Source of the DNA: Ylistrum balloti
Taxonomy: Eukaryota
Assembly: GCF_031769215.1 (NCBI RefSeq)
Contig: NW_026781917.1
Location: 2,170,001-2,234,000 of the forward strand
Length of the DNA stretch: 64,000 nt
Direction: 5' to 3'
The notes beneath the pieces were generated by a model. The model saw only the letters and a program-made list of their open reading frames with translations. It did no database searches and was not told where the DNA came from. This document shows positions 6,401 to 29,290 of this stretch, in pieces. The translations under genes were made by a program, and so were the position numbers. Each line of letters opens with the position of its first letter. The stretch's first letter is position 1.

Positions 6401-9187
6401 CTAGTGTGTTATGTGTATTTGTACTGTATGTCCTGTATGACTAGTGTGTTATGTGTATTTGTGTTGTAGGTCCTGTATGACTAGTGTGTTATGTGTATTT
6501 GTACGGTATGTCCTGTATGAAAAGTGTGTTACGTGTATTTGTACTGTATGTCCTGTATCACTAGTGTGTTATGTGTATTTGTACTGTAGGTCCTGTATGA
6601 CTAGTGTGTTATGTGTATATTGTCTGTTTGTCCTGTACGACCTGTGTGTTATGTGTATTTGTACTGTATGTCCTGTATGGCTAGTGTGTTATGTGTATAT
6701 TGTCTGTTTGTCCTGTGCGACCTGTGTGTTATGTGTATTTGTACTGTATGTCCTGTATGAAAAGTGTGTTATGTGTATTTGTATTGTATGTCCTGTATGA
6801 CTTGTGTGTTATGTGTATATTGTCTGTATGTCCTGTATGACTAGTGTATTAGGTGTATTTGTACTGTATGTACTGTTTGACTAGTGTGTTATGTGTATTT
6901 GTAGTGTTTGACTAGTGTGTTATGTGTATTTGTAGTGTTTGACAAGTGTGTTATGTGTATTTGTACTGTATGTCCTGTATGACTAGTGTGTTATGTGTAT
7001 ATTGTCTGTATGTACTATATGACTAGTGTGTTATGTGTATTTGTACTGTGTGTCCTGTATGACTAGTGTGTTATGTGTATTTGTACTGTATGTCCTGTAT
7101 GACTAGTGTGTTATGTGTATTTGTACTGTATGTCCTGTATGACTAGTGTGTTATGTGTATATTGTCTGTATGTACTATATGACTAGTGTGTTATGTGTAT
7201 TTGTACTGTGTGTCCTGTATGACTAGTGTGTTATGTGTATTTGTACTGTATGTCCTGTATGACTAGTGTGTTATGTGTATTTGTACTGTATGTCCTGTAT
7301 GACTAGTGTGTTATGTGTATTTGTACTGTATGTCCTGTATGACTTGTGTGTTATGTGTATTTGTACTGTATGTCCTGTATGACTAGTGTGTTATGTGTAT
7401 TTGTACTGTATGTACTGTATGACTAGTGTTATGTGTATGTTGTCTGTATGTCCTGTATGACTAGTGTGTTATGTGTATTTGTACTGTATGTCCTGTATGA
7501 CTAGTGTGTTATGTGTATTTGTACTGTATGTCCTGTATGACTAGTGTGTTATGTGTATTTGTACTGTATGTCCTGTATGAAAAGTGTGTTATGTGTATTT
7601 GTACTGTATGTCCTGTATGACTAGTGTATTATGTGTATTTGTACTGTATGTACTGTTTGACTAGTGTGTTATGTGTATTTGTACTGTAGGTCCTGTATGA
7701 CTAGTGTGTTATGTGTATTTGTACTGTATGACTAGTGTGTTATGTGTATTTGTACTGTATGTCCTGTATGACTAGTGTGTTATGTGTATTTGTATTGTAT
7801 GTCCTGTCTGACTAGTGTGTTATGTGTATTTGTACTGTATGTCCTGTATGACTAGTGTGTTATGTGTATTTGTACTGTATGTCCTGTATGACTAGTGTGT
7901 TATGTGTATTTGTACTGTATGTCCTGTATGACTTGTGTGTTATGTGTATTTGTACTGTATGTCCTGTATGACTAGTGTGTTATGTGTATTTGTACTGTAT
8001 GTCCTGTATGACTAGTGTGTTATGTGTATTTGTGTTGTAGGTCCTGTATGACTAGTGTGTTATGTGTATTTGTACGGTATGTCCTGTATGAAAAGTGTGT
8101 TACGTGTATTTGTACTGTATGTCCTGTATCACTAGTGTGTTATGTGTATTTGTACTGTAGGTCCTGTATGACTAGTGTGTTATGTGTATATTGTCTGTTT
8201 GTCCTGTACGACCTGTGTGTTATGTGTATTTGTACTGTATGTCCTGTATGGCTAGTGTGTTATGTGTATATTGTCTGTTTGTCCTGTGCGACCTGTGTGT
8301 TATGTGTATTTGTACTGTATGTCCTGTATGAAAAGTGTGTTATGTGTATTTGTATTGTATGTCCTGTATGACTTGTGTGTTATGTGTATATTGTCTGTAT
8401 GTCCTGTATGACTAGTGTATTAGGTGTATTTGTACTGTATGTACTGTTTGACTAGTGTGTTATGTGTATTTGTAGTGTTTGACTAGTGTGTTATGTGTAT
8501 TTGTAGTGTTTGACAAGTGTGTTATGTGTATTTGTACTGTATGTCCTGTATGACTAGTGTGTTATGTGTATATTGTCTGTATGTACTATATGACTAGTGT
8601 GTTATGTGTATTTGTACTGTGTGTCCTGTATGACTAGTGTGTTATGTGTATTTGTACTGTATGTCCTGTATGACTAGTGTGTTATGTGTATTTGTACTGT
8701 ATGTCCTGTATGACTAGTGTGTTATGTGTATATTGTCTGTATGTACTATATGACTAGTGTGTTATGTGTATTTGTACTGTGTGTCCTGTATGACTAGTGT
8801 GTTATGTGTATTTGTACTGTATGTCCTGTATGACTAGTGTGTTATGTGTATTTGTACTGTATGTCCTGTATGACTAGTGTGTTATGTGTATTTGTACTGT
8901 ATGTCCTGTATGACTTGTGTGTTATGTGTATTTGTACTGTATGTCCTGTATGACTAGTGTGTTATGTGTATTTGTACTGTATGTACTGTATGACTAGTGT
9001 TATGTGTATGTTGTCTGTATGTCCTGTATGACTAGTGTGTTATGTGTATTTGTACTGTATGTCCTGTATGACTAGTGTGTTATGTGTATTTGTACTGTAT
9101 GTCCTGTATGACTTGTGTGTTATGTGTATTTGTACTGTATGTCCTGTATGACTTGTGTGTTATGTTTTTGTTGTTTGTATGTCCTGT
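439..9187. repeat. 40-bp tandem satellite, about 220 monomers
   Basis: Monomer ACTAGTGTGTTATGTGTATTTGTACTGTATGTCCTGTATG repeats continuously, with 31-bp deletion variants and recurring diagnostic variants. The C/V/Y-rich ORFs here are by-products of the repeat. Confidence 0.98.
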
Positions 9188-11616: not shown

Positions 11617-12951
11617 ATGAGCAAAATGGATGTCGAAAAAACTGTTACCAACGACCGCCTGTTCATAAGAACTAACTTAGCTGCAAGTTTCACCTCTTCT
11701 GTTGAGTTCATTTTCCTGCCTTTGTTCTTGTAATGATAGTGATGACAACAGGGACCAGGCGCCAAGGGGAAACAAGAAACGTAAGAAAAAACGTTTCAAA
11801 ATATTTAGAAAAACCCACAGCGTGACGATTGCTACAGAAAACATGGCAGATCAACAGCAATGTGATTCATTGTCACTAAAACATCGGTTTACAGACATTT
11901 TTCAAAAGAAATATAAATCAAGACACTACAATGTTTCTAAACCAGCAACATACAATACTGTAAATGTTGATATTGAAAAAAGCGTTCTCAATGTTGACCA
12001 AAATAATGTTAATGCTTATATTGAAATACATCAACAGCAAATATGTTTAGGAGAGACAACCGAAAAGGATGACAGTAATAATTCTTCAAGGCGGAATGCG
12101 AAGGCGATTTGGATATCATCAGCTGAAAACAGTCATAGACATAGTTCACCGCAACCAGGGATATTTCTGCATGCAAGACGATGATATCAAGATAAGAAAT
12201 AAAGTCAACATCGTAGACTCGAAAGACTAGTAGGTTATCATATATAGAATATAATTAGTTCAATGATGATATTGTCTCAGTTATCCTTTTGTATTTTTCT
12301 CACACGCAGTCTAGCCTCAAAAACTTGCACCATAAGTTTCTTCAATTACGAGTCATAGACAAGTGAGTAGGTTTATGATGCAGTTGTATTGTAGGCTATG
12401 TTTTACCATATTCTGGGACTGTCTTTAAAGGTCTTCTTATTAAGTAACTCATTTGTACAATAGTAAATAATCCGATCCAAACTTCGGAAAAAGCATTGAT
12501 ATTAACCCTTTTGACAATTGCAATATACGACAGAGATAACATTGGGAAACGTGAAAGATCTACAAAACGGGTCTTCAGATCAGTTCAGGAGCAGTTACAC
12601 AAACCGACTGATTTTCTAGAATTAAAGCTAAAACATCACACATCTGCTGTGGAACCAGAATATCGCAAATCCGCAAACAAGAAAAAAGAGGAAGTCCTAT
12701 ACAATCGGTGTAGTTTTGCTTGTTCGAAACCTTCTTGCAGTGTATGGGGACCAGCCAGTGTTAGTAATTTTGTTGTCAGGTCACAATTGCCCTTGGATAA
12801 AAATGTAAAACAATTAATGTCAGATGTTCAGTTGATGAAAAATCATTTGTTGTCCGAATCCAATGACACTTCGTTCGATTGGCCGGTTAACAAACAAACA
12901 AACACACTGCCGTGTAGACGATATTGTACACAGTGTCCTTATAACCTGTAA
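11617..12951 (+). pseudogene. Paralogue A of the coiled-coil/RHIM-like family (pseudogene)
   Basis: Acceptor TTTGTTTCAG ends at 11600; ATG at 11617/11626. Similar to copy C (SSFSC...DSDD, KKR..IFRK.HS, HYNVS; exon 2 TDFLE.KLKHHTSA...WGP...DKNVKQLMSDVQLMKN.LLSE). Lesions: +1 frameshift near 11688-11701, further shifts near 12.10-12.16 kb and in exon 2, donor GT>AT (12192-12193), acceptor AG>AA (12522-12523). Confidence 0.88.
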
Positions 12952-13462
12952 GACTGACGTGGTAATGAAACATTGTAATCAGACATTAGTACACCATCGA
13001 TATCAATACAACATGGTAGACGGTTAAAAAGAGTGTTGCTTGTTACAGTTAAAAGTTTATATATCTACTATGATATATAATTGTGGTGTTTTTCGTTATC
13101 TGAGTAAACTGACATTTAAATTACCTGCTTAACAAAATACTGCCATTAGTATACAAGGTCAAAACAATAAAAAATGCTTATCCAGACATAAAAGATAACA
13201 TGTATCTTTTAGTTTAATTTATTGTTGTTTGTAAATCAATTGATCATGTTTTTTTTTCTTTAAAAAACACCTGTCGTTTATTGCGCAATGATGTATCATT
13301 CAAGAGTAATGCATCTCTAACGAAGAGACGCGCCTCCTATTTTTGTGTTATTTTCAGAACAAAATTACAAAAGAAAACTATCACATATACAGTTGGATTC
13401 ATATTGGCATTTAAATTGTAAATTTGTTTATCTCGCATAACTAGTTTTGAAAAAAATGTACT

Positions 13463-13830
13463 TTGTGTGGTACAAAGCTGGACGTGTTTGATGCTCGTTA
13501 GTTTGCCTGTTGGTTCCGTTGTGTGGTATAAAGCTGGACGTGTTTGATGCTCGTTAGTTTGTCTGTTGGTTCTGTTGTACGATATAAAGCTGGACGTGTT
13601 TGATGCTCGTCAGTTTGCTTGTTGGTTCTGTTGTACGATATAAAGCTGGACGTGTTTGATGCTCGTTAGTTTGCCTCTTGGTTCAGTTGTTGTTTACCTT
13701 GTTCTCATTTGAGAACGTCACATTACATACTTGGATTAACAAAAATTTTCATGGTTGGTTCAACGAAGCAGAATACGCTTACTCTTACGGAACACCTGGT
13801 CTTACTCTCCTGGTACTTTTTTCACGAATC
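13463..13830 (+). mobile_element. Dispersed non-autonomous element with an internal 54-bp tandem array (about 4 units)
   Basis: Units AAAGCTGGACGTGTTTGATGCTCGTTAG..., then hairpin GTTCTCATTTGAGAAC, then the CTTACTCTTACGGAACACCTGG tail. The same layout occurs at 42.1-43.6 kb and inverted at 47.6-47.8 kb. Confidence 0.8.
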
Positions 13831-16384
13831 TTCGTGTGATGCAATGAAGAGTTTTTGTCTGGCTGGCTATTCCATCACAGGGGTTTTTTGAGTATAAGAT
13901 ATAGCGTTACGTCTTTCTCTCGTCTTCGGTCGACGGAGAGGATAGTTTAAGAATACTGTCGTAGCATTTGCGGCGTCTAGCAGGCGAAGCATATGTAAAC
14001 TATGTTATAATATCGTATTTGAAGTCTTGTTTGCAGTCATAGTTTTCCGTTTTGTACATTAAAGAATATGGCATTTGACCTCCCTTTTGATTACAGTTAT
14101 GAACAATCTGCGATGTAAATACTTAACATTCCGGATATTTATATTATCCTTTAAAATAATACTATATAATGTAGATTTTCCCACAGTTAACAGTTCATGT
14201 TCAACAAAACGATTTGTCATTTTCGTGTCCGTTTTGTTTAAAATATATAATCATTATTAAATCAAATTTATTTCAAAATAGAAACGGAAATTGTTATTCC
14301 TGAAATGAATATCTTCATTAGTTTGGTTACAAGCTTGTGCATGCAGTTGTGAAAATAATTATCTTAAAGTGTTGTAACTCTAACACAATTATTCATCTAG
14401 TGTGTAGTATGGTTATGTGTTTCATACGTGAACAATCGGTATAGTTTCCTCTGTGCTATTCTTAACGCAACCAAATTGTTACAAATTCTCAAATCTCATG
14501 AAACGTTTGATTTCTAAATTATAAATCTGCACGTATTCAAATTTCTTTTTAAAATGTATTTTTATTGGTGCCTTCAACATGCAACAATGAGGCTAGGTAT
14601 TGTTAAACAGGTAGAAGGCGGTGCAATCTTTATCGTGTTTCACCGTACAATCTTTCTGATAGCAGTGTGACCCTAATATAGGAAATAACTGATAAAACGT
14701 GCATTGAATTTTAAGTGGGACGTCAACTATGTCAGGGAAACATTGATAGCTATCTTAGTAATTGTAGTAACTGAGACAAGGGAAGATGCAAGTGGACCAG
14801 CCACCATAGTTAGTTGTTTTGGAGTATTAATCCAAGGTGAGTGATGATTACGAGTCATGCAATAACTTCTGTCATTAGCATCATGATCAAATTACCACTT
14901 ACATAGTCGTTTCTATTACAATACCTGAAAGTAACCCCTTAGCAGAAATGCACTTTTGGAATCGAGATGTCGGTGACGTAAACGGTTCGACGTAGTTTCT
15001 TGTTGGTATACTGGTCACTAGACACTAGAATACTGCAGGACACAGCTAACTTCAGACAACATCAGCAGGGCTAATGTATGGTATACAGAGATAGCGGTTA
15101 ATCTGTACTACTTGTTCCGGGAATGTCTTTAATATCCCTTTTGTGGAATGAAGCACTTTACTGAGTAAACTGCATTCAGTCCTTCGTTTGGACATTTTTG
15201 TGAGGATTTTGATATTGTTATTGCCTGGTATGTAAATTACTCACCCATCAGTGTCAAACAAAACTGTATGTGCCTCTTAATTTATATATCCATATTATTT
15301 ACTCTTCCGTTTCCTTCACTTACAATTACCATACTTTTTAACGGCATATTTCAAACCCTTGGAATATTTAGATCTCAGCCACGGTATGGTATCACGGGGT
15401 AAATAGACATTTTGAAAAAAATAAAAGCATAAGGTGTGTGTTGACGGATACACTGACATCCATACCATCTATCTAGTATACACTATAATGACCATCCTTC
15501 TCATCCGATGCTGCCTCAGCAGAACAGCACTGGACCTGCTTCTTCTCAAAGAGGCCACATATTTGCCAAAATAGACAGCACATCTGTGCAAGCATTTGTT
15601 TCGGATGTATTTGTAAAGCACGGCGAATTATAATATAGTTTTATAAATCATAATTTTCATTTAAACATTCAAAATCGGTCACTGGGTCAGGAGTGTATAC
15701 TTTTCATTAATGCTTATTTTGCTAAATTTTTAATGGGTTGTATTTAACGTGTGTTGTTATTTGAATGTCTATCCGGTGTGTTTTATTGCTTGTTTCTTCT
15801 GGAGTCGTTTAGTGACAGAATTTGTCGGCTGGCCCTCTTAGCTTAAATATTCCTTTGTTTTATAAACACGATATATATCTTGTAAGTTATTACGTCCTCC
15901 AAAAGCTGTTATGAAATATCCACTGAAGAACTCTATGAAAGACAGCCGGAAGTAAAGAATATCTCAATTTGCAGAATTAGATATAATGAAATAATGATTT
16001 GAAATAGGAAAAATAGAAGCAGCAGCAAAGAATGACTGATTTCCTCTATACTGACTTGTCCTCTTATCTGTTTAAATATCATCATACTTCTCATCATTCT
16101 CAATTCAGTTGTAAAGTTAAACGATTAAGATATCTTCAGGAAAATTGCTCGCCATCAATGGCAAGAGAACTTCCAGGTCTATATTTCTGCATATACGACA
16201 ATAGCGGTAACATAAAGGGGGGCTTTATCTAAATCATTGTTCTTTATAGTTGTACCTGCTGATCAAGCCATATACAACATTACGTCGCCCCCAGAGTCTT
16301 CAGGGAAAGACGTTAGAGGTGAATATTGTGTCAACAACATCTTTACAGTGTCTCGAAGTGCCTGGCAAAAATAACTGAAACGAT

Positions 16385-17062
16385 ATGATGGAGAATTCGT
16401 TAAGGAGAGAATTAGAACTAACGCAAAAAGATGGAATTTCCAAGAGAGAACGTGAACTAATGCGAAGAGAGGATAACATTTCTAATAGAGAACGTGAACT
16501 AATGCAAAGAGAGGATAACATTTCTGAAAGAGAACGTGAACTAATGCAAAGAGAGGATAACATTTCTGAAAGAGAACGTGAACTAATGCAAAGAGAGGAT
16601 AACATTTCTGAAAGAGAACGTGAACTAATGCAAAGAGAGGATAACATTTCTAAAAGAGAACGTGAACTAATGCAAAGAGAGGATAACATTTCTAAAAGAG
16701 AACGTGAAATAAAAAAGACAGAATTAAAGCTAAATCGGAGAGAAGATGGTTTTACAAGTAGAGAATTACAACTTTCGCGAAGAGAAGATGAAGATTCCAG
16801 GGGAGAAGTAGAATTATTGCGAAGAAGAAGAGATGAAAATTCATCGAAAGATTTATTACTTTCGCGAGAGGATAACATACCAAGACATAAAGATGTCCTT
16901 TTATCTAGACAGCGTATCATTACTGTGAATAAAACTCATATTCATGTAGGCGATATTGTAAAAAATCACCAGCACATCAATATATCTAAATGTAAGACTC
17001 TACAGATGCGAACCGGAATGGTAGAAGACGATGAAAGAATTGGAAGCAATGATTCTGCATGA
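16385..17062 (+). pseudogene. Paralogue B: partial copy with a 225-aa open frame and expanded coiled coil
   Basis: Six 42-bp repeats encoding RERELMQREDNIS(E/K/N). C-terminal DIVKNHQHINISKCKTLQMRTG aligns with DIVHTPLYVEISECKTVQIGTG of copy C. In-frame TGA at 16376-16378 just upstream. No N-terminal region or terminal WGP exon found nearby. It could still be a translated short gene. Confidence 0.6.
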
Positions 17063-17935
17063 GCAAATTCACCGGGTAACAAGCTGATTATCAGTTTATT
17101 AGTTATATATCCATACAACACACAACCCATAGATATATGAATTTCATGACCGTTGATTTCTTTCATACTGTTATATATCATATCATATGTACGCCATTAT
17201 TGTTTGTTAGGATTTATCATATTTTCTACATAGTAAACGGCAGATAAAATCAACTGTTCATGAGAATATCTATTGAATGACTGCATTAGAATTGTAACTG
17301 TTGTTGTATTTCTTACTTAAATTGCAATTGTATTTATTACATAGACACTAATTCATAAAAAATGTGGTTTAAACGGAACACAACTCGCTATTTTCTTCAA
17401 ATTTGCTATTGAAAATAAAGATATTTTTCTTATTATCTAAACCTAGTGTTTGTTAAATATACTCAAGATCCTAATATGTAGGTTGCTTGTTATAACTCTT
17501 TAATCTTTTCTCTGATGACCCCAATGTCCTGGGCTACTTGTCTGAGGCCTAGTCTATATACACACTGTTCGACGGAAACCTGTCGGTCGGAGGGGATTTG
17601 AGGTCGTGGCTTAACACTACTTAGTTAATTGTCAATGCACAATTGGTAAGACATACTGATGGCCAGTAATACCAATATTACATAAATGAATGGACTATCG
17701 GCTCATATTTAATACATTTTTGCAAAACAATCAGTGTTTTTGTCGCCTAAAAATCAAAGTCAGATAAAAATGAAACCATCAAACAAATAGAGGTGTAGAG
17801 TCTTGCCGATTCCCTTAAGACACAAGAGAAATGTTTTACATTCTATTGATTTCCTTCACTAAACGTAAATAGTTGATAAATAAATAAATATTTAAAGTGA
17901 TGTCTACAGGGTGATGATTGAGGCCTGCCTGATTG

Positions 17936-17936
<1 letters not shown>

Positions 17937-17966
<30 letters not shown>
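17937..17966. repeat. (GAT)10 microsatellite
   Basis: Ten perfect GAT units. Confidence 0.95.
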
Positions 17967-17968
<2 letters not shown>

Positions 17969-18400
17969 GGCCTATAACAGGATAATGAGTACGGTGTGCA
18001 AGTGTCAGAGTAAGTGTGTCTGTATGATGTTGCATGTATGACTTGTCATTTATCTGTTATTGTTTTAATTGGCAAAAATGAATGAAAAATAAAAAAAGAA
18101 TTACAAAAAAAAAAAAAAAAAAAAAATATTTGAAAGGCGTTTTCTTTAAACATATATAAAGATCAATAGATAGTGCGTTCTTCTATCTTCGTTGATAATT
18201 GATTGCAAATATTTCATACGGAATATTTAGCACTATCCTAAGAATGCAAGTAATTTTGTGTAGTTTTGTTTATGTAGGCTACATACCTTGATCTTTTTGT
18301 ATACAAATTTCTATGATATATCTACTAAAAGGAAGTATTTTCTATCGTTCTTCTGTTTCATATTTTAAGCATGTGCTTTCTTCTGGTCATGTATTATACA

Positions 18401-18565
18401 TTTAATGTCCCGCATTGAAAGATCGGGGGCATATTGCTTTTGTGTTGTCTGTTTCTCTGTTGTCAACTTTAACACTGCCCAAAATTATTGCACCGTAAGA
18501 GGTAGAGCTTTCATATTTGGCATGTATGTCCCATGTGATCAGAGCCTGTGACCTTGACCATGCTA
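18401..18565 (+). mobile_element. Fragment of a pearl/CvA/HINE-like bivalve interspersed element
   Basis: End motif TTTAATGTCCCGCATTGAAAGATCGGGGGCATATTG (imperfect hairpin), followed by CTTTCATATTTGGCATG and TGACCTTGACC core motifs. It matches the inverted copy at 33.7-34.1 kb. The family name is from recall. Confidence 0.6.
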
Positions 18566-19562
18566 TTAGCACATGCCGTAGTTAAGTTTTGATGTGCCAC
18601 CTCAGACATTTGTTGCAACCGCGTGCATAGTGTTTCATAAACACATCTTGTCTTCTTTTACAAACACTATTTATCGTTTTGGATTGAAAGGATACCGGCA
18701 TTAAAACGCTAAATGGAAATGAGGTACTCCAATGTTGCTGACAAGTTTACGTTTTCAAAAAAAAAACTGTGATCAAATCTCTGTGTACTTGAGTTTAAAT
18801 CTATATATAAATATGTATTTCAGTTCAGATATGAACATTCGTTGATTTCGTTATCTGCTGTTGTATTTGTGATGATTAGACATGACAAATATAAGCGTTG
18901 CTCGATGGACTTGATGCACTCTGCGTTTATTTATTAAACCAAATCATTATCAGAACAAAATAAATAATTCGTGGAACAGTTAGATAGCTATATTAGGTAC
19001 AACAGACATGTGAAGGCGCTACAACAGACCGCAGTTTTCACCACAGGTAAGAAAACATCGACCTCTGTTGAAAGATATTGATGAAAATTTGAACAGACGT
19101 ATATTTAATTACCTTTGTTTTATTGAAGTTGCTGTTTTTCTCTCTCCATGTGTTAAGCATGACATTGTACACTTTTAAGCTTTCCAAGGAGACGGACAGA
19201 AATTTTACCTTTCCTCTTTGTCTTCTTAGCGAAAGACATAACCTAAATTTACCAGTGTGTATTGTGGGACATTCGTCGATAAATGCTTCCAATCTATCAG
19301 TAAAAATCTCGTACTTAGATCGAAATCTGATTCATATAAGAGTGTCTTATAATCAATTATGTATCATATTTGTGAACAACATACTATTTATCTGTGACGT
19401 TTAAGTGAAGGAATATCAGTTGATTTAGAAGTCATATATATATATAAACATTTAGATAAACTGCAGTAACGACAGTGGTTATCTTTAAGCTGTAAACAAG
19501 AATGCAAAATATTCATAAAAAAAAGAATGATTTTAGATTTGTTTTCAGTGCTTACTTCCAAA

Positions 19563-21014
19563 ATGGCTACAGGGAAATCTGTTTCTAACAATCCTCTGAT
19601 GAGGAGTATCTCAACGGAAAGTGGTGCTTCATCAAGACGTTCAAGTTCATTTTCCTGTATAAGTACAGACGACAACAGCGATGACACCATGGACAGGACA
19701 AATGAGGAAAAGAGAAAAGCGAAGAAAAAAAGTCACACACTTTTCCGGAAAGCTCATAGTGAAACAAAAGATAAAAACGCGGTAGGTAAACATCAGCGTG
19801 ATTCTTCCAAGCTTAAACGTCGATTAAGAAACTTTTTTAAAACAAAGAGGAAATCAGATCATTTCAATGTTTCCTTTTCACACACAGACGATATTGATAG
19901 TTGTGATACTGTTGACACTGAAAGGCATGTGCAACAGAAAGGTATACAAGATAATACCCAACCGGATTTCATTAATGATTTTTCACAACGCCATTCAAAG
20001 ATTGGTGATAATACTTCAAATGGGCTCACTGTAGAAAGCTGCGAGAACGATGAATTGCGACTCATAACAAACAAAAAGGAAGAGGAAATGAATGAGAAAC
20101 AAAAATATCGATTAGACAACAGCTTAAAGTCAGTTTCAAAGAAAGAATCAGAGCTTTCGAGAAGGGATGAGGATTTTTTGAGGAAGGAAAATGATCTTTT
20201 ATCCAACGCCATAAAAACTTTGAATGAAATGGCTGCTGTCCTTAGCGATATTGTGCACACTCCACTATACGTTGAAATATCTGAATGCAAGACTGTTCAG
20301 ATAGGAACTGGAAGCGAGGATGTCCAACAGAATTTGCAACAAGTTCGCAAAATGCTGGACAGTATATGTGCAAAGTATGACGATATCAAGGTAAAAACAT
20401 ATGCGACAACCAATAACCAACAACTTATAGCAATAATTTATTGTATACATGGTTAAATCAATATACATCAATGTTGGCTTTTCCTGGCGTCCCACAACAT
20501 CTCAATATTACGTTCCTTGCTTTACATTTGCGAAATTTTGCTGCATTCATATATTACATAATTGCCATTAATTTACCATAATTAGATGAGATTATAGTAA
20601 ACATCAAAATATTTTGCAGTATCATTTAACATACATCATAATTTCGATTTGCAGCATACGACGGAGGCAACACTAAATAGTGTGAAAAAACTACAAAATG
20701 AGTCTTCGGGTCACAAAAAGCAGTTGCACAAACTAGCTGAATTTCTTGAATCAAACCTGAGACGTCATACATCTGCTGAGGAGCCAGAACACTTAACAAA
20801 ATCTACAAACAATACACAAAATCAAGTGCCTTCTTGTGATCGGTGTAACCCTGCTAGTCCGAAACCTTCTGGTAATATATGGGGACCGTCTACCGTTCAT
20901 GATTTTGTTGTCAGCTCACATGTAACTATAGATAAAAACGTGAAACAGGTGATGGCAGATGTTCAGTTGATCAAAAACAGTTTATTGTCAGAACACCAAA
21001 GTACATATATGTGA
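19563..21014 (+). CDS. Paralogue C: intact two-exon gene, 395-aa coiled-coil protein with a RHIM-like VQIG motif and a conserved CxxC/WGP C-terminal region
   Basis: Acceptor GTTTTCAG ends 19548. CDS exon 19563-20390 (828 nt, phase 0, donor GTAAAA) joins exon 20655-21014 (acceptor TTTGCAG, ends TGA) with no interruption. Exon boundaries sit at homologous positions in paralogues A and D. Confidence 0.85.
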
Positions 21015-22040
21015 ACAATACTACCTTTTTAAAACAAAAACGGAAAGAATTACCTGGAAAAAGTAGCAATAAGAGACTGTTGAGAAGTGTTCCGAAACAC
21101 TAGACACTAAACACAGAAAAAAAATCAGTATCAACTTTTTTCTATGAAATTATTGATGATTCATTATGAGATATCATAGCTGTGTAATGGTTGAGCAGAT
21201 GTACATTTTTCCCTCGGCTTGGCGATTTGGTCCCGTAGATAGTGAGTTCGAGGCCTGGACAGGACACAAGTCAAAAATTATCTTCCTTCGTCAAACCTGT
21301 CATTAGGTACAAAATATCAATACATCATATGCGATAAAGTTGTTGATTCTAAGTCTCACTTAGTGTAAAATGCACACCTTGATCCCTGTTCTTTCAAGTT
21401 TGTTCATCAAAAATCTTAAAACAATGATATCTTAAGATAGAAATGATAGAAAATGTACAACAGTTGGATTATACGATCATACCAAAACAAATATTTCGTT
21501 TGAAATATCGGAGACAAATCCCTGAATTGTGATTGATATATATCTAAAGGGAAATAACTCAAATATAAGTGTTATGTGTGTAGATTTACTCGGCAATTAT
21601 TTCACGCATCGTGATCGTGAGGTCAGATTTGTCTATATGGTAAGATAATGGGAATACACCACAACGGTGGTGAAATCATCAATATTCGGAAAGTTTATGA
21701 TATATATCAGTATCCTTTACAAGTTGTATGGTTTCGTGCACTAAATTCTGTACCAAAAACAACCAAGTAAAGTGTATGTAGTGGTGATATTCCAAATGGC
21801 TGATATCAAGGTTACAGAATAAAGTTGTACGTTACACCCACTGATTAGACATGACTGAGATCTAATTTCCAACGTCACAAAATAGTTGGCACAATGCCAG
21901 ATTCTAAATAAAGAATGATCAAGGTTAATGAGATGACGTTCCCCTTCATATTCGTAGAAACAGATTTCGATGTAATATGACGTATGTAATGAGCTCACTT
22001 ACCGATATAGATTTGTAAAATCGTTCTTAACAGTAAATGT

Positions 22041-22197
22041 TGTCACATACAAAGAACCACACCATGTCTTGTTACAACAACATTCTATTCAGCCAGACGC
22101 TTGACATACATATTAACAATTACAAACACAGATGAGACCAAGACTAACGGGTAACACTATTGACCTGAACATGGACGTTAAATGTGATTACACGACA
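22041..22197 (-). repeat. 3' LTR of the Gypsy element
   Basis: Direct repeat of 27127-27283. On the minus strand it is preceded by a polypurine tract (plus-strand TCTCTCTTTTTTTTCTTTTT, 22198-22217). Confidence 0.95.
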
Positions 22198-22610
22198 TCT
22201 CTCTTTTTTTTCTTTTTAACTGAAAGATCTTTAACACTATAACACTAATAATAAAATGAGTTATATTTACCATATCAATAGTGTTTGTTATTTCTTATCA
22301 TTTAGCACAGTTCTCAGACCAAAAGTCTTTTCATAAAAGCAATACAACGGTTGTATTTCTTGTAAATGATAAGAACTATTTTATATTGAATGATATCCAA
22401 ATAAATCACAATGTTCTTGAACTTCGTCAATGAGTAGGATAACATTAACAAACCAAAGAATAGATCAAAGAACATATGATAATAGAACGCGTATTGGAAC
22501 ACGTTACGGAACACATCAGGGAACACTTGGAACACATCCTGCCAGGAAATCACAACTAAATATTGTTTTGACTAGAACTATAACTGTTTAAGCTTTGTAT
22601 ATGTTAATAT

Positions 22611-25600
22611 TCACTGGAACCGACTTGGTTTCCGAACTTCGCGACCTGATTTAGTTTTATATGGACTTTTGACTAAATCACGAGGCTTATCCTCAGGACT
22701 GACAGTTGGTACACATGCAGGTTGTGACTTGAGGTCAACCACGGAGTGTATTGTTGGACTTTGAACTGCAGGACTTGTGATCTCCAGCTTTATATCCTCA
22801 TCATCCAGTGTAGGTAAGGACTTTGTTACTTTGAGATGCTTCCTGTTCCTTCTGTATTTCTTTCCATCTGATGTCTGTACTACATTGGATCTAGGTGTCT
22901 GGTGTTTATCAACTACAGTGCTGTGCGTCCATGTTCTTTCATTACCTGTTTTCATCATGACAGTGTCATTCTCTTGTAATGGTTTGCGACCTTTTGTTGC
23001 ATGTCTATTAAAATAATTTCTTTGTCGAAATTGTCTTAACTTTAAACTGTCCTGAATCTCGTCTGACGCTCATGGTTTCAACAATGGGGTTGCTGTTGGT
23101 AGGGTGGTCTTAAGTCGCCTTCCCATGAATATTTGTGCAGGTGAAAGGTCAATTCCATCGATCGGTGAGTTTCGATAATCGAGTATTGCTAGGTATGGGT
23201 CATTTGCCTTCTTCAGTAGTCCCTTTACTGTCTGTACCATTCTTTCCGCTTGGCCATTTGATGAGGGGTAATGTGGACTCGTGGTAGTGAGTTGAAAACC
23301 GTAGTCTTTTGAGAATTTGGTAAATTCCCGACTCGCAAACTGTGGTCCGTTGTCACTTATGACTTGGTCTGGAATTCCATAGTTGGAAAACTGGCTCTTT
23401 ACATGGTTAATGACAGAGCTTCTTGTCAGTCCTTGTAATTTTGAGATTTCAGGCCACTTTGAAAAATAGTCTACGCTAAGCAGGTAATGTTGCCCCTTAA
23501 GTTCAAATAGATCCATTGCCACTTTAGCCCATGGTCGGTTTGGTATGTCGTGGGGTATAAGTGGTTCCTTTGCGTTGCTGTTTGTGTGTCTAGCACAAAT
23601 GTTGCATGTGGCAACCTTCTCTTCTATATCAGTACTCATTCCTGGCCAAAATAGTACTTCCCTCGCGCGTGCCTTACATTTGACCATACTAAGATGCGCC
23701 TCATGTATCCGGTCAAGCATTTCTGGTCGCAGAGACTTTGGAATGATCAGTTTGTGTACTTTGAACATCAATCCATCAATGCAGGTAATTTCGTCGCGAT
23801 AATTCCAGTATGTCTGAATTTGTTGATCAACTTCCTGTTTGGTTTCCGGCCAACCAGTCATTATTTGTTGTCTCAGCCTTGACATCTCTAGGTCATTCTC
23901 TGTACCTTCTTTGATAGTTTTGTACTTTTCTGATGAGACCGTTAAATATGCCAACAAATAGAGTTCATTGACAGCAAGATCCTCTACTAAAGTTTCCTCT
24001 GTTTCCTCTAGGAATGCCCTTGACAGTGTGTCAGCTACATATAACAATTTGCCTGGTTTATAGGTCACCTCCAGGTCATACTTTTGGAGTGTGAGCACAG
24101 TTTCTGAAGTCGAGCAGGTACTTTATACATAGACTTCTTAAATATGCTCTGTAACGGTTTGTGGTCAGATTCCACTTGAACTTTCCTCCCATAAAGGTAT
24201 TGATGGAATTTTGTGCATCCGTACACTATTGCGAGAGTCTCTTTCTCTATCTGTGAGTAGCGTTCCTAAGTAGGAGTTAGTGCCCTTGATGCATATGCAA
24301 TAGGTTTACCGTCCTGTATGATTGCTGCACCCATTCCTTTTGAGCTACTATCCACTGTCATTACAATCGGTTTGTTTGTGTCAAAGTATGTCAACACTGG
24401 TGCCTTGGTCACCATCAGCTTCAATTTATTGAAACTTTTTTCCTGTTGGGCTCTCCATTCCCAATGTGTTCTTTCCCAGGAGTTGTCTTAGTGGTGCGGC
24501 TACCTCAGACAAGTTTGGCAGGAGTTTTGCTAGATATTGTACAAATCCTAAGAAGGTCATCAGTTCCTTTTGATTCTGTGGTGCCTTCATTCCTTTAACC
24601 GCTCTAACCTTGTCAGGGTGTGGTCTAAGTCCATCCTTGCTAAGGACGTGGCCAACATATGTCACTTCCTGTCTCCCAAACTGACATTTATCAGCATTTA
24701 ATTTGAGGTTATAAGCTTTGAAGGACTTCTTGTAGCCTTCTGTCATGTTCCTCGACTGACTTTCCCCAGACTAAAATGTCATCTACTATAGCTTCTGCGC
24801 CATCAATGTCTTCCACCATGTTTGACATTACTGACTGAAAAACTTCGGGTGCAGAGTTCAATCCAAATGGCATGCGGAGAAATCTATAGCGTCCAAATGG
24901 TGTGTTGAATGTACATAGCTTTGAACTGGGCTCGTCAAGTTGTAATTGCCAAAACCCAGACGTAGCATCCAGTTTGGAGAAATATTTGGCTTCCGGAATC
25001 CATGCTACTATTTCCTCAATGGTCAACATAGGATAGTGTTGTCTCTTGATAGCTGTATTCAAATCTCTTGGGTCCAGACATATTCTGATTTTACCATTTG
25101 GCTTGGTAACCGTTACCATGCTATTAACCCAGTCTGTAGGTCCTTTCTCAAGCACAATTATGCCATTTTTTCCCATTTGTGCCAATTCCAGTTTTACCTT
25201 GTCCCTTAATGCCACCGGCACTTTTCTCGGAGGGGGTGGGGGGGGGGGGGGGGGGTGGGGGGGGGGGGGGGGGGGTGTGTATCACCGGCTGTTGTACTGT
25301 ACTGTTAATATGTATTGTGTGATATCCTGGTAGACAGCCTACTCCACTAAATAGTTCGCTGTACTCTTCTTTTAGCTTTTCGTAGCGTACTTGACTATCA
25401 TTGTTTGTAGAGCTTCTGTTCAGCCCAAATAAGCGTTTCACCAGTCCAATCGACATAGCGCTCTCTGCTCCTATGATTGTAGGGGCTGTTTTCTCAATTA
25501 CTTGAAATTGTATCACATGATTGTTGTTGTCCTTGAAATTACATTGAAGCTTCACAGTTCCAATTGATTTAATTGCATGACCACTATACGACCTCAGCAT

Positions 25601-27086
25601 GGCTTCAGATTTCTCTAGTGGGGTTTTCACCTGTAATGACTTCAGGGTTTGTTGACTTATAACATTGCACCTGGCCCCTGTGTCTACTTGTGTTCTTAAT
25701 GTTTTGTTGTTCACTATACAACACACTGTCCAATCATCATTGAGTCTGTTTACTGGCAAGTCATTTTCCATTCCTACATACAAATCTGTCTCTCTAGCAT
25801 CACTTGTACTGTCATCTGTGAGGTAATTCTCCACCACCTGTACTAACATTTTACTGTTCTTTTTGTTGTACTTTGGTTTCTCACTACGACATTGGCTCGC
25901 AAAATGATTCATCTTTTTGCACAGATTACACTTCTTACCATATGCAGGACATGTTGCTCCTTTGAATTTGTGTTCATACCCACACTTGTTACATTTCACT
26001 TCAGTTTTTTCATGTCTCTGTCTCGTACTTTGTGTATTTCTGCTCTTCTTATTCGTTGTTTGTTTAACGATGTGGACCTTGGGGTCCTCTTGACTAAACA
26101 TACTTTTCAGCTGTTTCTGTGATATTTCGTGTGTCCTGGCTATATCCATTGACTTCTGTAGTGTCAGTTCAGAACCTTCATTAATAAGTTTTTCTCGAAC
26201 TTTAGCTGACTTGACACCCAAGATTATGTGATCATGGACGATTTCATCTTCCATCTCAGGAGCATAACAGTGATGTCGAATGAGTCCAAAGAAATACAAA
26301 CTAAACGCCTTTAATGAGTTCCTTTATTACATATACAAAGTTCCTAGTTCCTACAGCCATAGTCCACAATCATCACAAACACAGTGTAGGGGTTCTTGGT
26401 TGCACCTAGCTTGCGCCCCAACCTGCGGTAAAAAACTGAAAAATACAGAAATTAACCTGTCCTTAGTACATATTTTACCTTTAGAGCCACAAAACAAACA
26501 TATTTCAACAAAATTAATCAAATTTCAAACGTTTAAACCGTATTAAAGTTACCTCATGGGTCACCTAAGCCTTGCCAAATTTGCATGTCTGTTTCCTTTG
26601 GACTTTCACGTAAACATATCCCATGATGCATTTTTCCACGACGTACAAAGAATGAACTCTGAACCCTGACCTGACTACCAGAGCGGACGGACAATATAAA
26701 ACTAGCGTTTCACTACAATAACCACAGTCTTTAAATAAGACTCTCAAGTCTGTCATGGATTGTTCAAACGGTTCATCTTTAGACTGAACCCGGGACTTCA
26801 GCCGATACCGTGCAAATATTATATTTGACTTGGGTTCACAGTAATTTTCAAAGCCATTGAAGTACGTTTCGAGCTTTTTTCTTTCATCTGCGGTTACATT
26901 CCATGTAGAGAAGATGTTTCTTCCCTTTTCTCCAACCCATAGCATTAGATAATTACATTTTGGTTCTTCATTCTTACCAGCAAGCGGTCCACCAAATGTA
27001 AATTCACAATGAGTTTTGAATGCTTTGAATGCCGTCGGTAGGTCGTTTGATGACCAGTCCATTTTGGGGTATTTGTCCTGTTCCAT
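22611..27086 (-). pseudogene. Gypsy gag-pol coding region, broken
   Basis: Split across ORFs 26565-27086, 25148-26299, 24709-25221, 24426-24746, 23070-24098 and 22611-22958 by an insertion in gag, a poly-C expansion, frameshifts, a TAG in RNase H (RALTPT*ERYSQIEKE) and a TGA in the integrase C-terminal region. Confidence 0.93.
26269..26717 (-). mobile_element. 449-bp insertion, probable solo LTR nested in the Gypsy gag
   Basis: Flanked by a 5-bp direct repeat ATAAC (26264-26268 and 26718-26722). Ends are TGTAGTG...CATCACT on the minus strand (TG...CA with one change), with AATAAA about 55 nt from its 3' end. Removing it restores gag ...FKDCGY-APEMEDEIVHDHIILG. Confidence 0.82.
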
Positions 27087-27108
27087 CTTTTGACAATGAT
27101 TTGACTTT

Positions 27109-27126
27109 ATCCCGCTTCTGACACCA
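27109..27126 (-). promoter_or_regulatory. Primer-binding site, tRNA-Leu-type
   Basis: Minus-strand TGGTGTCAGAAGCGGGAT lies directly inside the 5' LTR and is complementary to a tRNA 3' end ...AUCCC(G/A)CUUCUGACACCA, as in metazoan tRNA-Leu(CAA). Confidence 0.85.
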
Positions 27127-27283
27127 TGTTACATACAAAGAACCACACCATATCTTGTTACAACAACATTCTATTCAGCCAGACGCTTGACATACATATT
27201 AACAATTACAAACACAGATGAGACCAAGACTAACGGGAAACACTATTGACCTGAACATGGACATTAAATGTTATTACACGACA
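27127..27283 (-). repeat. 5' LTR of the Gypsy element
   Basis: Direct repeat of 22041-22197; adjacent to the PBS. Confidence 0.95.
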
Positions 27284-28339
27284 AATGTCTCTACCAAGCT
27301 ATTTTCATTATGGTCTTAGTAAATATGAAATTAAGTATCAGTTTCTGGTGTGATAAAAATCAACAAGAATATACAAACATATCATTATTTTCATGACCCA
27401 ACCTCAAATTCAAAAAAACTATATGAAAAAAAAAATGAAAAAAAAAAAAAAAATGAACGGAGACTCCTGGAAAAAAACAGGGATAAGACCAGATGTAAAC
27501 TAAATTCCACGAGGGTATGGAAAGCTCACTACACAGAAGAGTTCCATTTCAAGCATAGAATCACACGTTGATAGAAGCTCGATATCAGTTTAGATTAAAA
27601 GATACTCTCGTCAGTGTGATTATCGTTTATAAGCGGCGTAGTCATTGTACTCGTGGGTTAATACATAAAACTGAAAATCATCTGTTTGATTCCAAGATGA
27701 CTGCGCCCAGTATAAATTTGTAAGAAATCATAACTTTAAAAGGTGTGTTGGTACCGCAGCGAGACACAAATTAACACTTAAATAACTTGACAACAGATCA
27801 AATTTTCTAACATTTGACCTTTTAAAGACATGCGTTAATTTTCTAACGACTAGACATGTTTCCCCTTAAGCATCCTGATTTTCTCTTCAGCACAAAATAA
27901 CTTTAGTAAGTATGTGGATATCAAATATCTTCCTTCTATCGCATTTATTAAAATTTACTGATAAACGGTGTCTTGGCACGAAAAATATCTATATTAGGAA
28001 ACATGTGTGGTAAGAAAGATAACGAACACGTGATATTTTATAATGAATACAGCGTTATTTTATGTCTGTACAACAGTGATCATTAATTTTGTTTTTCCTT
28101 TTTATAAACATTCCTGAAGCTTGTTTTGTTGTTTGTGTATTATGTCCTCATAACATCTGTGGTACAAACGAAAGAAAACCCAACTTCGAAATAAAATGGA
28201 TCCGCTGAAGAAAGTCACAAGGAGAACGCACCAACAATGATAATTCATGTTAAAGCCAAGAGTCTGGAGAAAGATGTTGGGGCAAACTCTTCTATATAAT
28301 GCGTTGAAACTGTTGAGCAACACAGCTGTGAGTCGGGTG

Positions 28340-29290
28340 ACCGATTGGGAGAACTGTTCAATAAAGAACTAATGAGAGATCGACAGAAGAGAGCGAATGT
28401 TAATTCAGGGATGGAATTAGAGGGACAAAAACATTACATTTTTGTTAGAGAATCGGGACAAACGAGAAAAGAATTTAAACATTTAAGATGAAAATCAGAA
28501 CTGTCTCAAAAAGAAGGTTAAATTTTCTGGAGAGAATAAAAACTTTCGCGAAGAGATGATGAAAATTCAAAAAGAGAATTAGAAATTTCGCGAAGGGCAG
28601 CTGAAATATCAAGGATATAATTTGAATTTTCGGGAAAAGAAGATGAAAATAACAGGACAAATGGCTTTTTATCTAGTGATAATAACGTTACTGTAAATAC
28701 TTGAAATGAATTGGCTACTGCCCTTGATGAGATTATGCGAAATCATCGATAGGTCAAAATATCTAGATGTGAGAATGTTCGGATCGGAACCGGAAATGTG
28801 GAACAAATCAAACATAATTTGTAGCCAGTGTCTTCTATACTGGGCGATATGTGTGAACAGTACGAAGATATACAGGTAAACGTTTATTTGAAAACTACGT
28901 CTAGCAGCATCTAAAACTGCATACAATTAATTGCAAAAATGAACCTACTTAACTACTGTTAATTTCATATATTTTACAGTCCAATATTTAAGGTAACCAT
29001 TTCTATTCACAATATGTACTTCTAAAAGAAGCAGTAACACAAACTGACTGATTTCCTAGAAACAAAAACTAAAACATCATACATCTGCTGAGGAGACAAA
29101 TAAGTTAAGTAAAACCGAAAATAATTTACAAGAAAAAATGTTTATGTGTGATCTATGTCATTTGTCAAATACAAAACCATCTAGCAATATATGGGGACCG
29201 CCTGCAGTTCACGGTTCTGTTGTAAGCTCTCGTGTGATCCTGATTAAAAATGTAAAACAAATGATCTAGATACCCAGTCGCTTAAAAGAA
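28340..29290 (+). pseudogene. Paralogue D of the coiled-coil/RHIM-like family (pseudogene)
   Basis: The first-exon remnant ends ...NELATALDEIMRNHR*VKISRCENVRIGTGNVEQIKHNL*PVSSILGDMCEQYEDIQ at 28875 with an intact GT donor, and has seven in-frame stops. The second-exon remnant (about 28980-29290) reads HKLTDFLE/LKHHTSAEE...MCDLCHLSNTKPSSNIWGPPAVHGSVVSS...KNVKQ with frameshifts. The 5' limit is approximate. Confidence 0.9.

What the first reader, a model, noticed from the sequence alone, without database searches (positions are those of the whole stretch)
11617..29290. Tandem cluster of an unrecognised RHIM-like coiled-coil gene family: one intact copy, three decayed
Seen: four + strand paralogues (A 11617-12951, B 16385-17062, C 19563-21014, D about 28340-29290). 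A, C and D share a two-exon layout; C reads as a Ser/basic N-terminus, an E/R/K coiled coil, a (V/I)xISxCxx(V/L)(Q/R)(I/M)(G/R)TG motif, a short helix and a conserved C-terminal region, and the others retain subsets of these. Established: RHIMs (RIPK1 IQIG, RIPK3 VQVG, TRIF VQLG, ZBP1 IQIG, usually preceded by a hydrophobic-x-hydrophobic strand and followed by G-x-x-N) form amyloid signalling platforms in cell-death and innate-immune pathways. Inference: this is a birth-and-death family of RHIM adaptors or decoys. I see no kinase, death, TIR or Z-alpha domain attached, which is not the architecture of the classical RHIM proteins. It lies next to two Tyr-motif receptor genes.
Basis: partly seen in the sequence, partly recalled or inferred. 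Interest (0 to 1): 0.88.

Follow-up and report, generated by a model that had tools for sequence, protein, structure and literature searches.

The report
Scallop-only coiled-coil gene cluster
This is a real tandem cluster of a gene family found so far only in scallops, with one working copy and three decayed ones, but the "RHIM" cell-death motif seen in the working copy is not kept in its relatives and is probably a coincidence.

Summary
The window is from the scallop Ylistrum balloti. Four + strand paralogues sit at the stated places. Copy C is the annotated 395-aa "uncharacterized protein LOC132562544" (two exons, GT..AG intron). Copy A has two frameshifts and has lost its middle. Copy D has seven in-frame stops, a frameshift and a late stop. 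Copy B is a truncated 225-aa ORF swollen by a young 42-bp repeat.

An exhaustive HMMER search of 1.84 billion proteins found relatives only in two other scallops. Pecten maximus has its own tandem cluster of at least three copies with the same intron position. dN/dS is 0.36-0.47 overall and 0.23-0.41 in the core, so this is a real, fast-evolving, scallop-restricted orphan family.

The RHIM reading is not supported:
- The tetrad reads VQIG, VQVG, IHIG, IKIG, VRIG, LQMR and IALS across the seven members, whereas bivalve-to-human RIPK1 keeps V/I-Q-V/I-G.
- No member hits the Pfam RHIM model, and none hits RIPK chains in the PDB.
- There is no Gly before the strand, no G-x-x-N after it, and no signalling domain.

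What is conserved is h-x-h-x2-C-x2-h-x-h. That spacing matches the RIPK "aliphatic tetrad" but also fits an ordinary beta-hairpin. I leave about 10% for an amyloid-like role. The scan has flagged RHIM-like motifs at six other places in this genome. No RNA data could be laid.

The parts
11617..12951 (+). Copy A, a pseudogene. The N-terminal Ser/basic region is at 11617-12184, with a probable frameshift near 11700. The coiled coil and motif are missing. The exon 2 remnant is at 12518-12870, with a frameshift near 12580.
   Evidence: tblastn HSPs fall in different frames. Three-frame translation. Exon 2 is 53% identical to C, E 9e-32. blastn gives 72% over 347 nt in exon 2 only. Not a called gene.
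16385..17062 (+). Copy B, a truncated copy with an open 225-aa ORF. It consists of an expanded coiled coil plus the motif (16973-17017, tetrad LQMR), then stops. It has no N-terminal region and no exon 2.
   Evidence: ORF list. BLASTP to C, E 5e-6. tblastn. Not a called gene.
16436..16712 (+). A 42-bp (14-codon) tandem repeat, 6.6 copies at 97% identity, inside copy B. It is a recent expansion of the coiled-coil unit (ISxRERELMQREDN).
   Evidence: Tandem Repeats Finder. Contigs of another individual break here.
19563..20390 (+). Copy C exon 1, codons 1-276. It encodes the Ser-rich and polybasic N-terminus, the coiled coil (about residues 161-231), the motif loop, and the start of the second long helix.
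   Evidence: 100% match to NCBI 'uncharacterized protein LOC132562544', 395 aa. GT donor at 20391. AF2 secondary structure.
20268..20312 (+). The motif YVEISECKTVQIGTG (residues 236-250) of copy C. It lies in a low-confidence, non-helical loop (residues 232-251) between two long helices.
   Evidence: Coordinates. AF2. Family alignment.
20391..20654 (+). Phase-0 intron of copy C (GT..AG). Its position is shared by all three P. maximus copies.
   Evidence: Sequence. tblastn exon boundaries in L001 and L003.
20655..21014 (+). Copy C exon 2, codons 277-395 plus the stop. It encodes the rest of the helix, a disordered linker, the conserved PSxNIWGPSxV..DVQLIK region and the terminal helix.
22041..27290 (-). 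A decayed Ty3/gypsy-type LTR retrotransposon inserted between C and D. The LTRs are at 22041-22204 and 27127-27290 (95% identical). The gag, protease, RT and integrase ORFs on the minus strand are fragmented.
   Evidence: Direct repeat. ORFs. Precomputed Pfam hits RVT_1, rve, Integrase_H2C2 and Asp protease.
28340..29290 (+). Copy D, a pseudogene. The coiled-coil and motif remnant at 28366-28875 has 7 in-frame stops (motif 28753-28794, tetrad VRIG). The exon 2 remnant at 29026-29266 has a frameshift at 29067/29069 and a stop at 29267. It has no N-terminal region.
   Evidence: A 42-bp periodicity remains at 28531-28650.

Best explanation
The cluster is a tandem array of a scallop-restricted (Pectinidae) orphan gene family. 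It encodes soluble intracellular coiled-coil proteins.

The domain plan is:
- a disordered Ser-rich N-terminus with a conserved SSFSC(I/V)S patch and two polybasic helices;
- a coiled coil built from a 14-residue E/R/K unit;
- a short non-helical loop with the conserved frame (N/T/S)-P-x-Y-h-x-h-x-x-C-x-x-h-x-h-G-T-G-x-x-D;
- a second long helix, a disordered linker, and a conserved C-terminal block.

Shown: the family is real, under purifying but relaxed selection, and duplicated in tandem in at least two scallop genera. In Y. balloti only copy C is intact. A and D are pseudogenes. B is a truncated remnant with a young minisatellite expansion.

Inferred: the protein most likely works as a self-associating scaffold. 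The coiled coil oligomerises it. The basic N-terminus targets it to the nucleus or to acidic membranes. The conserved loop is a structural beta-hairpin or turn at the tip of a helical hairpin, with an invariant buried Cys, rather than a RHIM. The VQIG tetrad of copy C is one state of a variable, solvent-type position (Q/H/K/R/A) and a mostly-Gly position.
For: - Identity and gene model.
- Four paralogues.
- Family range: exhaustive phmmer over 1.84 billion representatives gives only P. maximus and M. yessoensis proteins. A profile search adds nothing. A second P. maximus paralogue and an uncalled third copy lie in tandem, all with the same intron position.
- Selection: dN/dS is 0.36-0.47 overall and 0.23-0.41 in the core.
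- Another individual's DNA carries an in-frame 9-nt insertion in exon 1.
- Structure: two AF2 runs give the same helix-loop-helix picture, with the motif in the loop at residues 232-251.
- Tetrad variation VQIG / VQVG / IHIG / IKIG / VRIG / LQMR / IALS, with invariant P234, Y236, C242, G250, D253 and C269.
- No Pfam RHIM hit in any member. No RIPK hit in the PDB.
- The tetrad pattern occurs 5 times by chance in the window's six-frame translation.
Against: - No function is shown. There is no RNA evidence: the only run found is DNA.
- The AF2 models are low confidence (pTM 0.23-0.24), so the hairpin reading of the loop is inference.
- The four aliphatic positions of the motif have exactly the i, i+2, i+8, i+10 spacing of the RIPK1/RIPK3 'aliphatic tetrad' that drives amyloid nucleation (preprint 10.64898/2026.02.19.706818). 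Q is the commonest residue at tetrad position 2 (3 of 7). An ancestral RHIM-like state cannot therefore be excluded.
- tBLASTn of other mollusc genomes was not possible with these tools, so 'scallop-only' rests on annotated proteins.
Confidence: 0.72

Rival explanations
1. The motif is a functional RHIM-like or cryptic-RHIM amyloid element. The coiled coil concentrates the loops, which stack into a beta-arch amyloid. This either builds an immune or cell-death signalling platform or acts as a decoy for the bivalve RIPK1-like RHIM.
For: - Copy C (VQIG) and the third P. maximus copy (VQVG) have canonical tetrads.
- All seven members keep aliphatic residues at i, i+2, i+8 and i+10, the spacing of hRIPK3 V450/I452/V458/V460 that is essential for nucleation.
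- The segment is predicted non-helical between oligomerising helices.
- Bivalves do have RIPK1 homologues with a RHIM (PMC12119088).
- The loose cRHIM definition (V/I)xxG fits 5 of 7 members (PMC13506858 and PMC9387487).
- Fast evolution and tandem birth-and-death are typical of immune genes.
Against: - Q is replaced by H, K, R or A, and G by R or S, including in the called P. maximus and M. yessoensis genes (P. maximus core dN/dS about 0.3). Real RHIM tetrads are conserved from mussel to human.
- No RHIM profile or PDB RHIM match.
- Two charged residues always sit in the inter-strand segment. The Gly that precedes the second strand in RIPK1/3 is absent, there is no G-x-x-N, and there is no third hydrophobic strand; a helix starts instead.
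- No kinase, death, TIR or Z-alpha domain.
- (V/I)xxG is too loose to discriminate.
Confidence: 0.1
2. The post-motif helices are a distant syntaxin Habc-like or SNARE-regulator helical domain, making the family a membrane-trafficking accessory.
For: The family profile's best PDB matches are the syntaxin-1A N-terminal domain (1br0, 1ez3), E 0.044-0.055, over about 80 residues covering the conserved LD.LC.KY..IK...L..V....L..LA.FL block.
Against: The E-values are not significant for helical, heptad-rich sequence. No member hits any Pfam syntaxin or SNARE model. Foldseek and Atlas structure searches give nothing. There is no SNARE motif or TM anchor.
Confidence: 0.04
3. Copy C and its relatives are not real protein-coding genes but spurious gene models on repetitive or decaying DNA.
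For: No RNA evidence could be obtained here. There is no known domain. Three of the four local copies are broken.
Against: ORFs stay intact with a conserved intron position in three scallop genera. dN/dS is well below 1 at dS of about 1.1-1.4. The polymorphic insertion in another individual is in frame.
Confidence: 0.03

Closest known systems
RHIM of RIPK1, RIPK3, TRIF and ZBP1 (Pfam RHIM; core tetrad (V/I)-Q-(V/I/L/C)-G)
   Same: Copy C has VQIG, and one P. maximus copy has VQVG. Four aliphatic positions lie at i, i+2, i+8 and i+10, as in hRIPK3 V450/I452/V458/V460. The segment lies outside predicted helices.
   Different: The tetrad is not conserved in the family (H, K, R or A for Q; R or S for G). 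There is no profile match. There is no Gly before the strand, no G-x-x-N and no third strand. Charged residues sit in the turn. No kinase, death, TIR or Z-alpha domain is attached.
Cryptic RHIMs of the insect and crustacean IMD pathway (PGRP-LC/LE, Imd, Pirk, SRB2; core (V/I)xxG)
   Same: The loose core (V/I)xxG fits 5 of 7 members. The proteins are short motif carriers without kinase domains.
   Different: There is no PGRP, death-domain or IMD-pathway context. The defining Gly is lost in two members. The definition is too permissive to be a test.
Taxonomically restricted (orphan) coiled-coil gene families in bivalves that evolve by tandem duplication and pseudogenisation
   Same: Restricted to one family of molluscs. 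No Pfam domain. Tandem arrays in two genera. Relaxed purifying selection. Pseudogenes and a TE insertion inside the array.
   Different: It has a sharply conserved non-helical loop with an invariant Cys, and a conserved C-terminal block, which plain coiled-coil fillers lack.
Syntaxin-1A N-terminal Habc domain
   Same: Weak profile similarity (E about 0.05) over about 80 helical residues after the motif.
   Different: Not significant. There is no SNARE motif and no TM anchor, and there is no support from Pfam or fold searches.

Membership tests
Canonical RHIM | Core tetrad (V/I)-Q-(V/I/L/C)-G present | tested here: met
   Copy C has VQIG at residues 245-248. The same pattern occurs 5 times in the 128,000 six-frame codons of the window, so presence alone is weak.
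Canonical RHIM | Tetrad conserved among homologues (kept from mussel RIPK1 to mammals, PMC12119088) | tested here: not met
   The seven members read VQIG, VQVG, IHIG, IKIG, VRIG, LQMR and IALS. The IHIG and IKIG genes are called genes, with dN/dS of about 0.3 between them in the core.
Canonical RHIM | Match to the curated RHIM profile (Pfam), or sequence similarity to solved RHIM chains | tested here: not met
   No RHIM hit at E up to 10 for C, whole or as the 71-aa motif piece. No hit at E up to 1 for the six further sequences from the other scallops. No RIPK1, RIPK3, ZBP1 or M45 chain among PDB matches by single sequence or profile. HMMER filters drop very weak hits, so this excludes only a recognisable match.
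Canonical RHIM | Flanking architecture: aliphatic residues at i, i+2, i+8, i+10; Gly on both sides of the central strand; G-x-x-N and a third hydrophobic strand | tested here: inconclusive
   The aliphatic spacing is kept in all 7 members. The Gly before the strand is absent (T, D, S or N). The Gly after it is present in 5 of 7. There is no G-x-x-N, and residues after the motif are acidic and then helical.
Canonical RHIM | Sits in a protein with a cell-death or innate-immune signalling domain (kinase, DD, TIR, Z-alpha) | tested here: not met
   No Pfam domain reaches threshold in any member.
Canonical RHIM | Tetrad-dependent amyloid formation and heterotypic RHIM binding | not testable with these tools
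   This needs ThT or EM and co-assembly assays. No amyloid predictor was available.
Cryptic RHIM (IMD-type) | (V/I)xxG core with the fourth-position Gly invariant (PMC9387487) | tested here: inconclusive
   Fits C, D and the three P. maximus copies. Gly is lost in B (R) and in the M. yessoensis protein (S). The pattern is too loose to discriminate.
Pectinidae orphan family (LOC132562544, LOC117329717, LOC117330180, LOC110440323) | Significant full-length similarity, shared two-exon structure, conserved loop and C-terminal block | tested here: met
   E 4.8e-63 and 3.2e-8. 63% identity between the P. maximus paralogues. Same intron position. Alignments A1-A3.
Ty3/gypsy LTR retrotransposon (element at 22041-27290) | Flanking direct LTRs and internal gag, protease, RT and integrase | tested here: met
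   164-nt LTRs at 95% identity, 5086 nt apart. RVT_1, rve, Integrase_H2C2 and Asp protease on the called products. The ORFs are fragmented.

The most novel reading that the evidence does not exclude
The conserved loop is a diverged RHIM-like beta-arch. In this reading, scallops evolved a family of kinase-less coiled-coil proteins whose aliphatic-tetrad motif (ancestrally h-Q-h-G) nucleates functional amyloid. Coiled-coil oligomerisation provides the trigger. The different tetrad variants (VQIG, VQVG, IHIG, IKIG) tune assembly with, or act as decoys for, the bivalve RIPK1-like RHIM pathway.
Probability: 0.08. Interest if true: 0.75.

Novelty: new member of a known kind. Interest (0 to 1): 0.25.

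Why it matters
As it stands, this is a tidy example of a taxonomically restricted gene family evolving by tandem birth and death in scallops. It has parallel arrays in two genera, pseudogenes, a minisatellite-expanded remnant and a retrotransposon insertion. That is useful for annotation: A, B and D should be marked as pseudogenes or remnants, and a third P. maximus copy is uncalled.

It also matters as a caution. A RHIM core tetrad is expected by chance about once per 25,000 codons (5 in this window's six frames). The scan has flagged RHIM-like motifs at six other places in this genome, so each needs an orthologue-conservation test.

If the minority reading were true, it would be a new architecture for amyloid signalling in molluscs: a coiled coil plus a RHIM-like arch with no kinase or death domain.

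Tried and rejected
- Pfam scans of all pieces and all family members gave only sub-threshold, mutually inconsistent coiled-coil hits: ATG17_like, DUF16, PMC2NT, and RNase_Y_N on the B repeat.
- The ESM Atlas feature and structure search gave generic disordered or coiled-coil clusters, with scores of 0.75 or less and TM below 0.5.
- Foldseek of the AF2 model against the PDB found nothing: one hit, E 2.6.
- A second AF2 run with an 8-row alignment did not improve confidence.
- A Zn-knuckle idea for the C-terminal CxxC plus C242/C269 was dropped. The second Cys is Tyr in P0005, and the first is missing in copy A.
- A profile search through the word index found no new members.
- RNA evidence: the only run holding the locus is a DNA run of another individual. 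It shows even depth of about 12x across the intron and intergenic DNA.
- A literature search for the four LOC identifiers, XP_021338990 and the M. yessoensis locus tag found nothing.
- The neighbouring 'Tyr-motif receptor' ORFs have no Pfam match and lie more than 20 kb away, so they give no functional context.
- I did not run an amyloid predictor, because none was available, and I did not score with scales recalled from memory.
Full report
**What is there.** The window is from the scallop Ylistrum balloti (GCA_031769215.1, contig JAUZWB010000381.1).

Copy C is a two-exon gene. Exon 1 is 19563-20390, followed by a phase-0 GT..AG intron, and exon 2 is 20655-21014. Its 395-aa product is identical to NCBI 'uncharacterized protein LOC132562544' (P0001).

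tblastn of P0001 on the window finds exactly four + strand loci: A (11705-12103, 12518-12870), B (16433-17017), C, and D (28585-28875, 29069-29266). Pairwise scores are far beyond chance: A against C exon 2 is 53% identical, E 9e-32; D against C gives E 2e-16; B against C over the motif gives E 5e-6. DNA similarity between copies is 65-72% and confined to exons, so the duplications are old.

**State of the copies.**
- Copy A reads in one frame from the ATG at 11617/11626 and in another from about 11702. Its exon 2 switches frame near 12580. It has no coiled coil or motif, since only about 330 nt of unrelated sequence lies between its N-terminal ORF and exon 2. The N-terminal frameshift is inferred by eye from a frame-1 stretch that resembles C's N-terminus; the exon 2 frameshift is confirmed by HSPs in different frames.
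- Copy D has seven in-frame stops between 28366 and 28875, a frameshift at 29067/29069 and a stop at 29267. It has no N-terminal region.
- Copy B is an open 225-aa ORF (16385-17062). It consists only of coiled coil plus motif, followed by 18 unrelated codons. The coil is inflated by a 42-bp repeat, 6.6 copies at 97% identity.
- None of A, B or D is a called gene in the public annotation within 10 kb of C.
- A decayed Ty3/gypsy LTR element sits between C and D. Its LTRs are at 22041-22204 and 27127-27290, 95% identical.

**How far the family reaches.** An exhaustive phmmer run over 1.84 billion representative proteins returned only two relatives:
- Pecten maximus LOC117329717 (P0002, 410 aa, 40% identity, E 5e-63);
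- Mizuhopecten yessoensis LOC110440323 (P0003, 301 aa, E 3e-8).

A search from P0002 added a second P. maximus paralogue, LOC117330180 (P0005, 433 aa, 63% identical to P0002). The locus around it holds a third copy, uncalled in the public annotation, at L003:13900-14589 and 15186-15527. That copy has no stop in 344 aligned codons.

The three P. maximus copies lie in tandem within about 16 kb on the same strand, and all share C's intron position. A profile search added nothing.

Nei-Gojobori dN/dS among the four apparently intact genes is 0.36-0.47 overall and 0.23-0.41 for the core (residues 195-315 of C), at dS of 0.3-1.4. A DNA run from another individual carries a 9-nt in-frame insertion in exon 1.

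So this is a genuine, fast-evolving protein family. It is known so far only from Pectinidae and is arranged in tandem arrays in at least two genera.

**Anatomy of the protein.** Two AF2 runs (single sequence, then an 8-row alignment) agree, though confidence is low (pTM 0.23-0.24):
- residues 1-45: disordered, Ser-rich, with the conserved SSFSC(I/V)S patch;
- residues 46-66 and 74-96: two basic helices;
- then a disordered spacer;
- residues 161-231: a long helix, the coiled coil built from a 14-residue unit;
- residues 232-251: a non-helical, low-pLDDT loop holding the motif;
- residues 252-315: a second long helix;
- residues 316-368: a disordered linker;
- residues 370-393: a terminal helix.

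By inspection there is no signal peptide or TM segment. No Pfam family reaches threshold in any member. Atlas and Foldseek searches are uninformative. The family profile's best PDB match is the syntaxin-1A Habc domain at E 0.044, which is not significant for helical sequence.

**The RHIM question.** The motif across the seven members is as follows:

| Member | Motif | Tetrad |
|---|---|---|
| Y. balloti C | YVEISECKTVQIGTG | VQIG |
| P. maximus third copy | YVKILRCKNVQVGTT | VQVG |
| P0002 | YVNMAGCRDIHIGTG | IHIG |
| P0005 | YVNISQCKSIKIGTG | IKIG |
| P0003 | YIKLSRCENIALSHG | IALS |
| Y. balloti B | HINISKCKTLQMRTG | LQMR |
| Y. balloti D | VKISRCENVRIGTG | VRIG |

Tetrad position 2 is therefore Q, Q, H, K, A, Q, R. 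Position 4 is G, G, G, G, S, R, G. The invariant residues are P234, Y236, C242, G250 (the second Gly of GTG), D253 and C269, not Q246 or G248.

The literature defines the RHIM by a highly conserved (V/I)-Q-(V/I/L/C)-G tetrad (PMC13506858). RIPK1 keeps V/I-Q-V/I-G from zebra mussel and Lingula to mammals, and single-residue changes alter signalling (PMC12119088). Here two called P. maximus paralogues, with core dN/dS of about 0.3 between them, have replaced Q with H or K.

No member matches the Pfam RHIM model. Neither single motifs nor the family profile find any RIPK1, RIPK3, ZBP1 or M45 chain in the PDB.

The tetrad pattern occurs five times in the 128,000 six-frame codons of this window alone. 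My own arithmetic from typical residue frequencies puts chance occurrences at hundreds per proteome. That fits the scan having flagged RHIM-like motifs at six other places in this genome.

The third, amyloid formation, cannot be tested here.

**What keeps a minority reading alive.** A deep-mutagenesis preprint shows that amyloid nucleation by RIPK1/RIPK3 depends above all on an 'aliphatic tetrad' at hRIPK3 V450, I452, V458 and V460, which is spacing i, i+2, i+8, i+10 (10.64898/2026.02.19.706818). All seven family members keep aliphatic residues at exactly that spacing: V237, I239, V245 and I247 in C. The segment is non-helical and flanked by an oligomerising coiled coil. Q is also the commonest residue at position 2.

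Against this, the same spacing is what any two-stranded amphipathic hairpin with a five-residue turn would show. In addition:
- the turn always carries two charged residues;
- the Gly that precedes the central strand in RIPK1/3 is absent;
- there is no G-x-x-N;
- the sequence turns acidic and helical straight after the motif.

The loose cRHIM definition, (V/I)xxG with an invariant Gly (PMC9387487), fits five of seven members but has no discriminating power. I put an amyloid-like function at about 10%.

**Most likely mechanism (inferred).** I read this as a self-associating intracellular scaffold. The 14-residue-repeat coiled coil oligomerises it. The polybasic N-terminus, with a nearby conserved Cys, directs it to the nucleus or to acidic membranes. 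The conserved loop with its invariant Cys is a structural hairpin at the tip of a helical hairpin. None of this is shown experimentally. No RNA run could be found, and the one run holding the locus is genomic DNA.

**Verdict.** The 'RHIM adaptor or decoy' half is not supported. The family is a new, unnamed, scallop-restricted orphan family of modest interest.

Noticed in passing
window 439-9187: An 8.7-kb satellite of a 40-bp unit (about 224 copies, 89% matches). It has very strong strand asymmetry (GC skew +0.4 to +0.49, AT skew about -0.4 to -0.48) and fills the left edge of the window.
   Followed up: partly
window 13474-13690 and 42115-43526: The same 56-bp tandem-repeat family occurs as a short array (3.9 copies) between copies A and B and as a 25-copy array 29 kb away. 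A separate 42-bp array (37 copies) at 37063-38619 creates a spurious 531-aa ORF.
   Followed up: no
window 18392-18759 (also 33654-33911, inverted): A short stretch between B and C has 160-260x word depth in another individual's DNA run, against about 12x around it. A diverged inverted copy lies at 33.7-33.9 kb. This looks like a high-copy dispersed repeat (SINE- or MITE-like).
   Followed up: partly
L003:13900-14589 and 15186-15527 (Pecten maximus LR736843.1): A third P. maximus family member, apparently intact (no stop in 344 aligned codons, tetrad VQVG). It is not a called gene in the public annotation.
   Followed up: partly
window 20204: Another individual's assembly carries a 9-nt in-frame insertion (AAACAGTTT) in the coiled-coil part of copy C exon 1, so there is length polymorphism within the species.
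   Followed up: no
The second has a tail with YMEI and YSEV motifs. Neither has a Pfam match, and they lie 22-26 kb from copy D rather than next to the cluster.
   Followed up: partly
window 60653-61099: A 45-bp tandem repeat (about 10 copies, 80% matches) produces a 201-aa repetitive ORF (SYSCFVLLGFVSD... units). Whether it is coding or a minisatellite was not examined.
   Followed up: no
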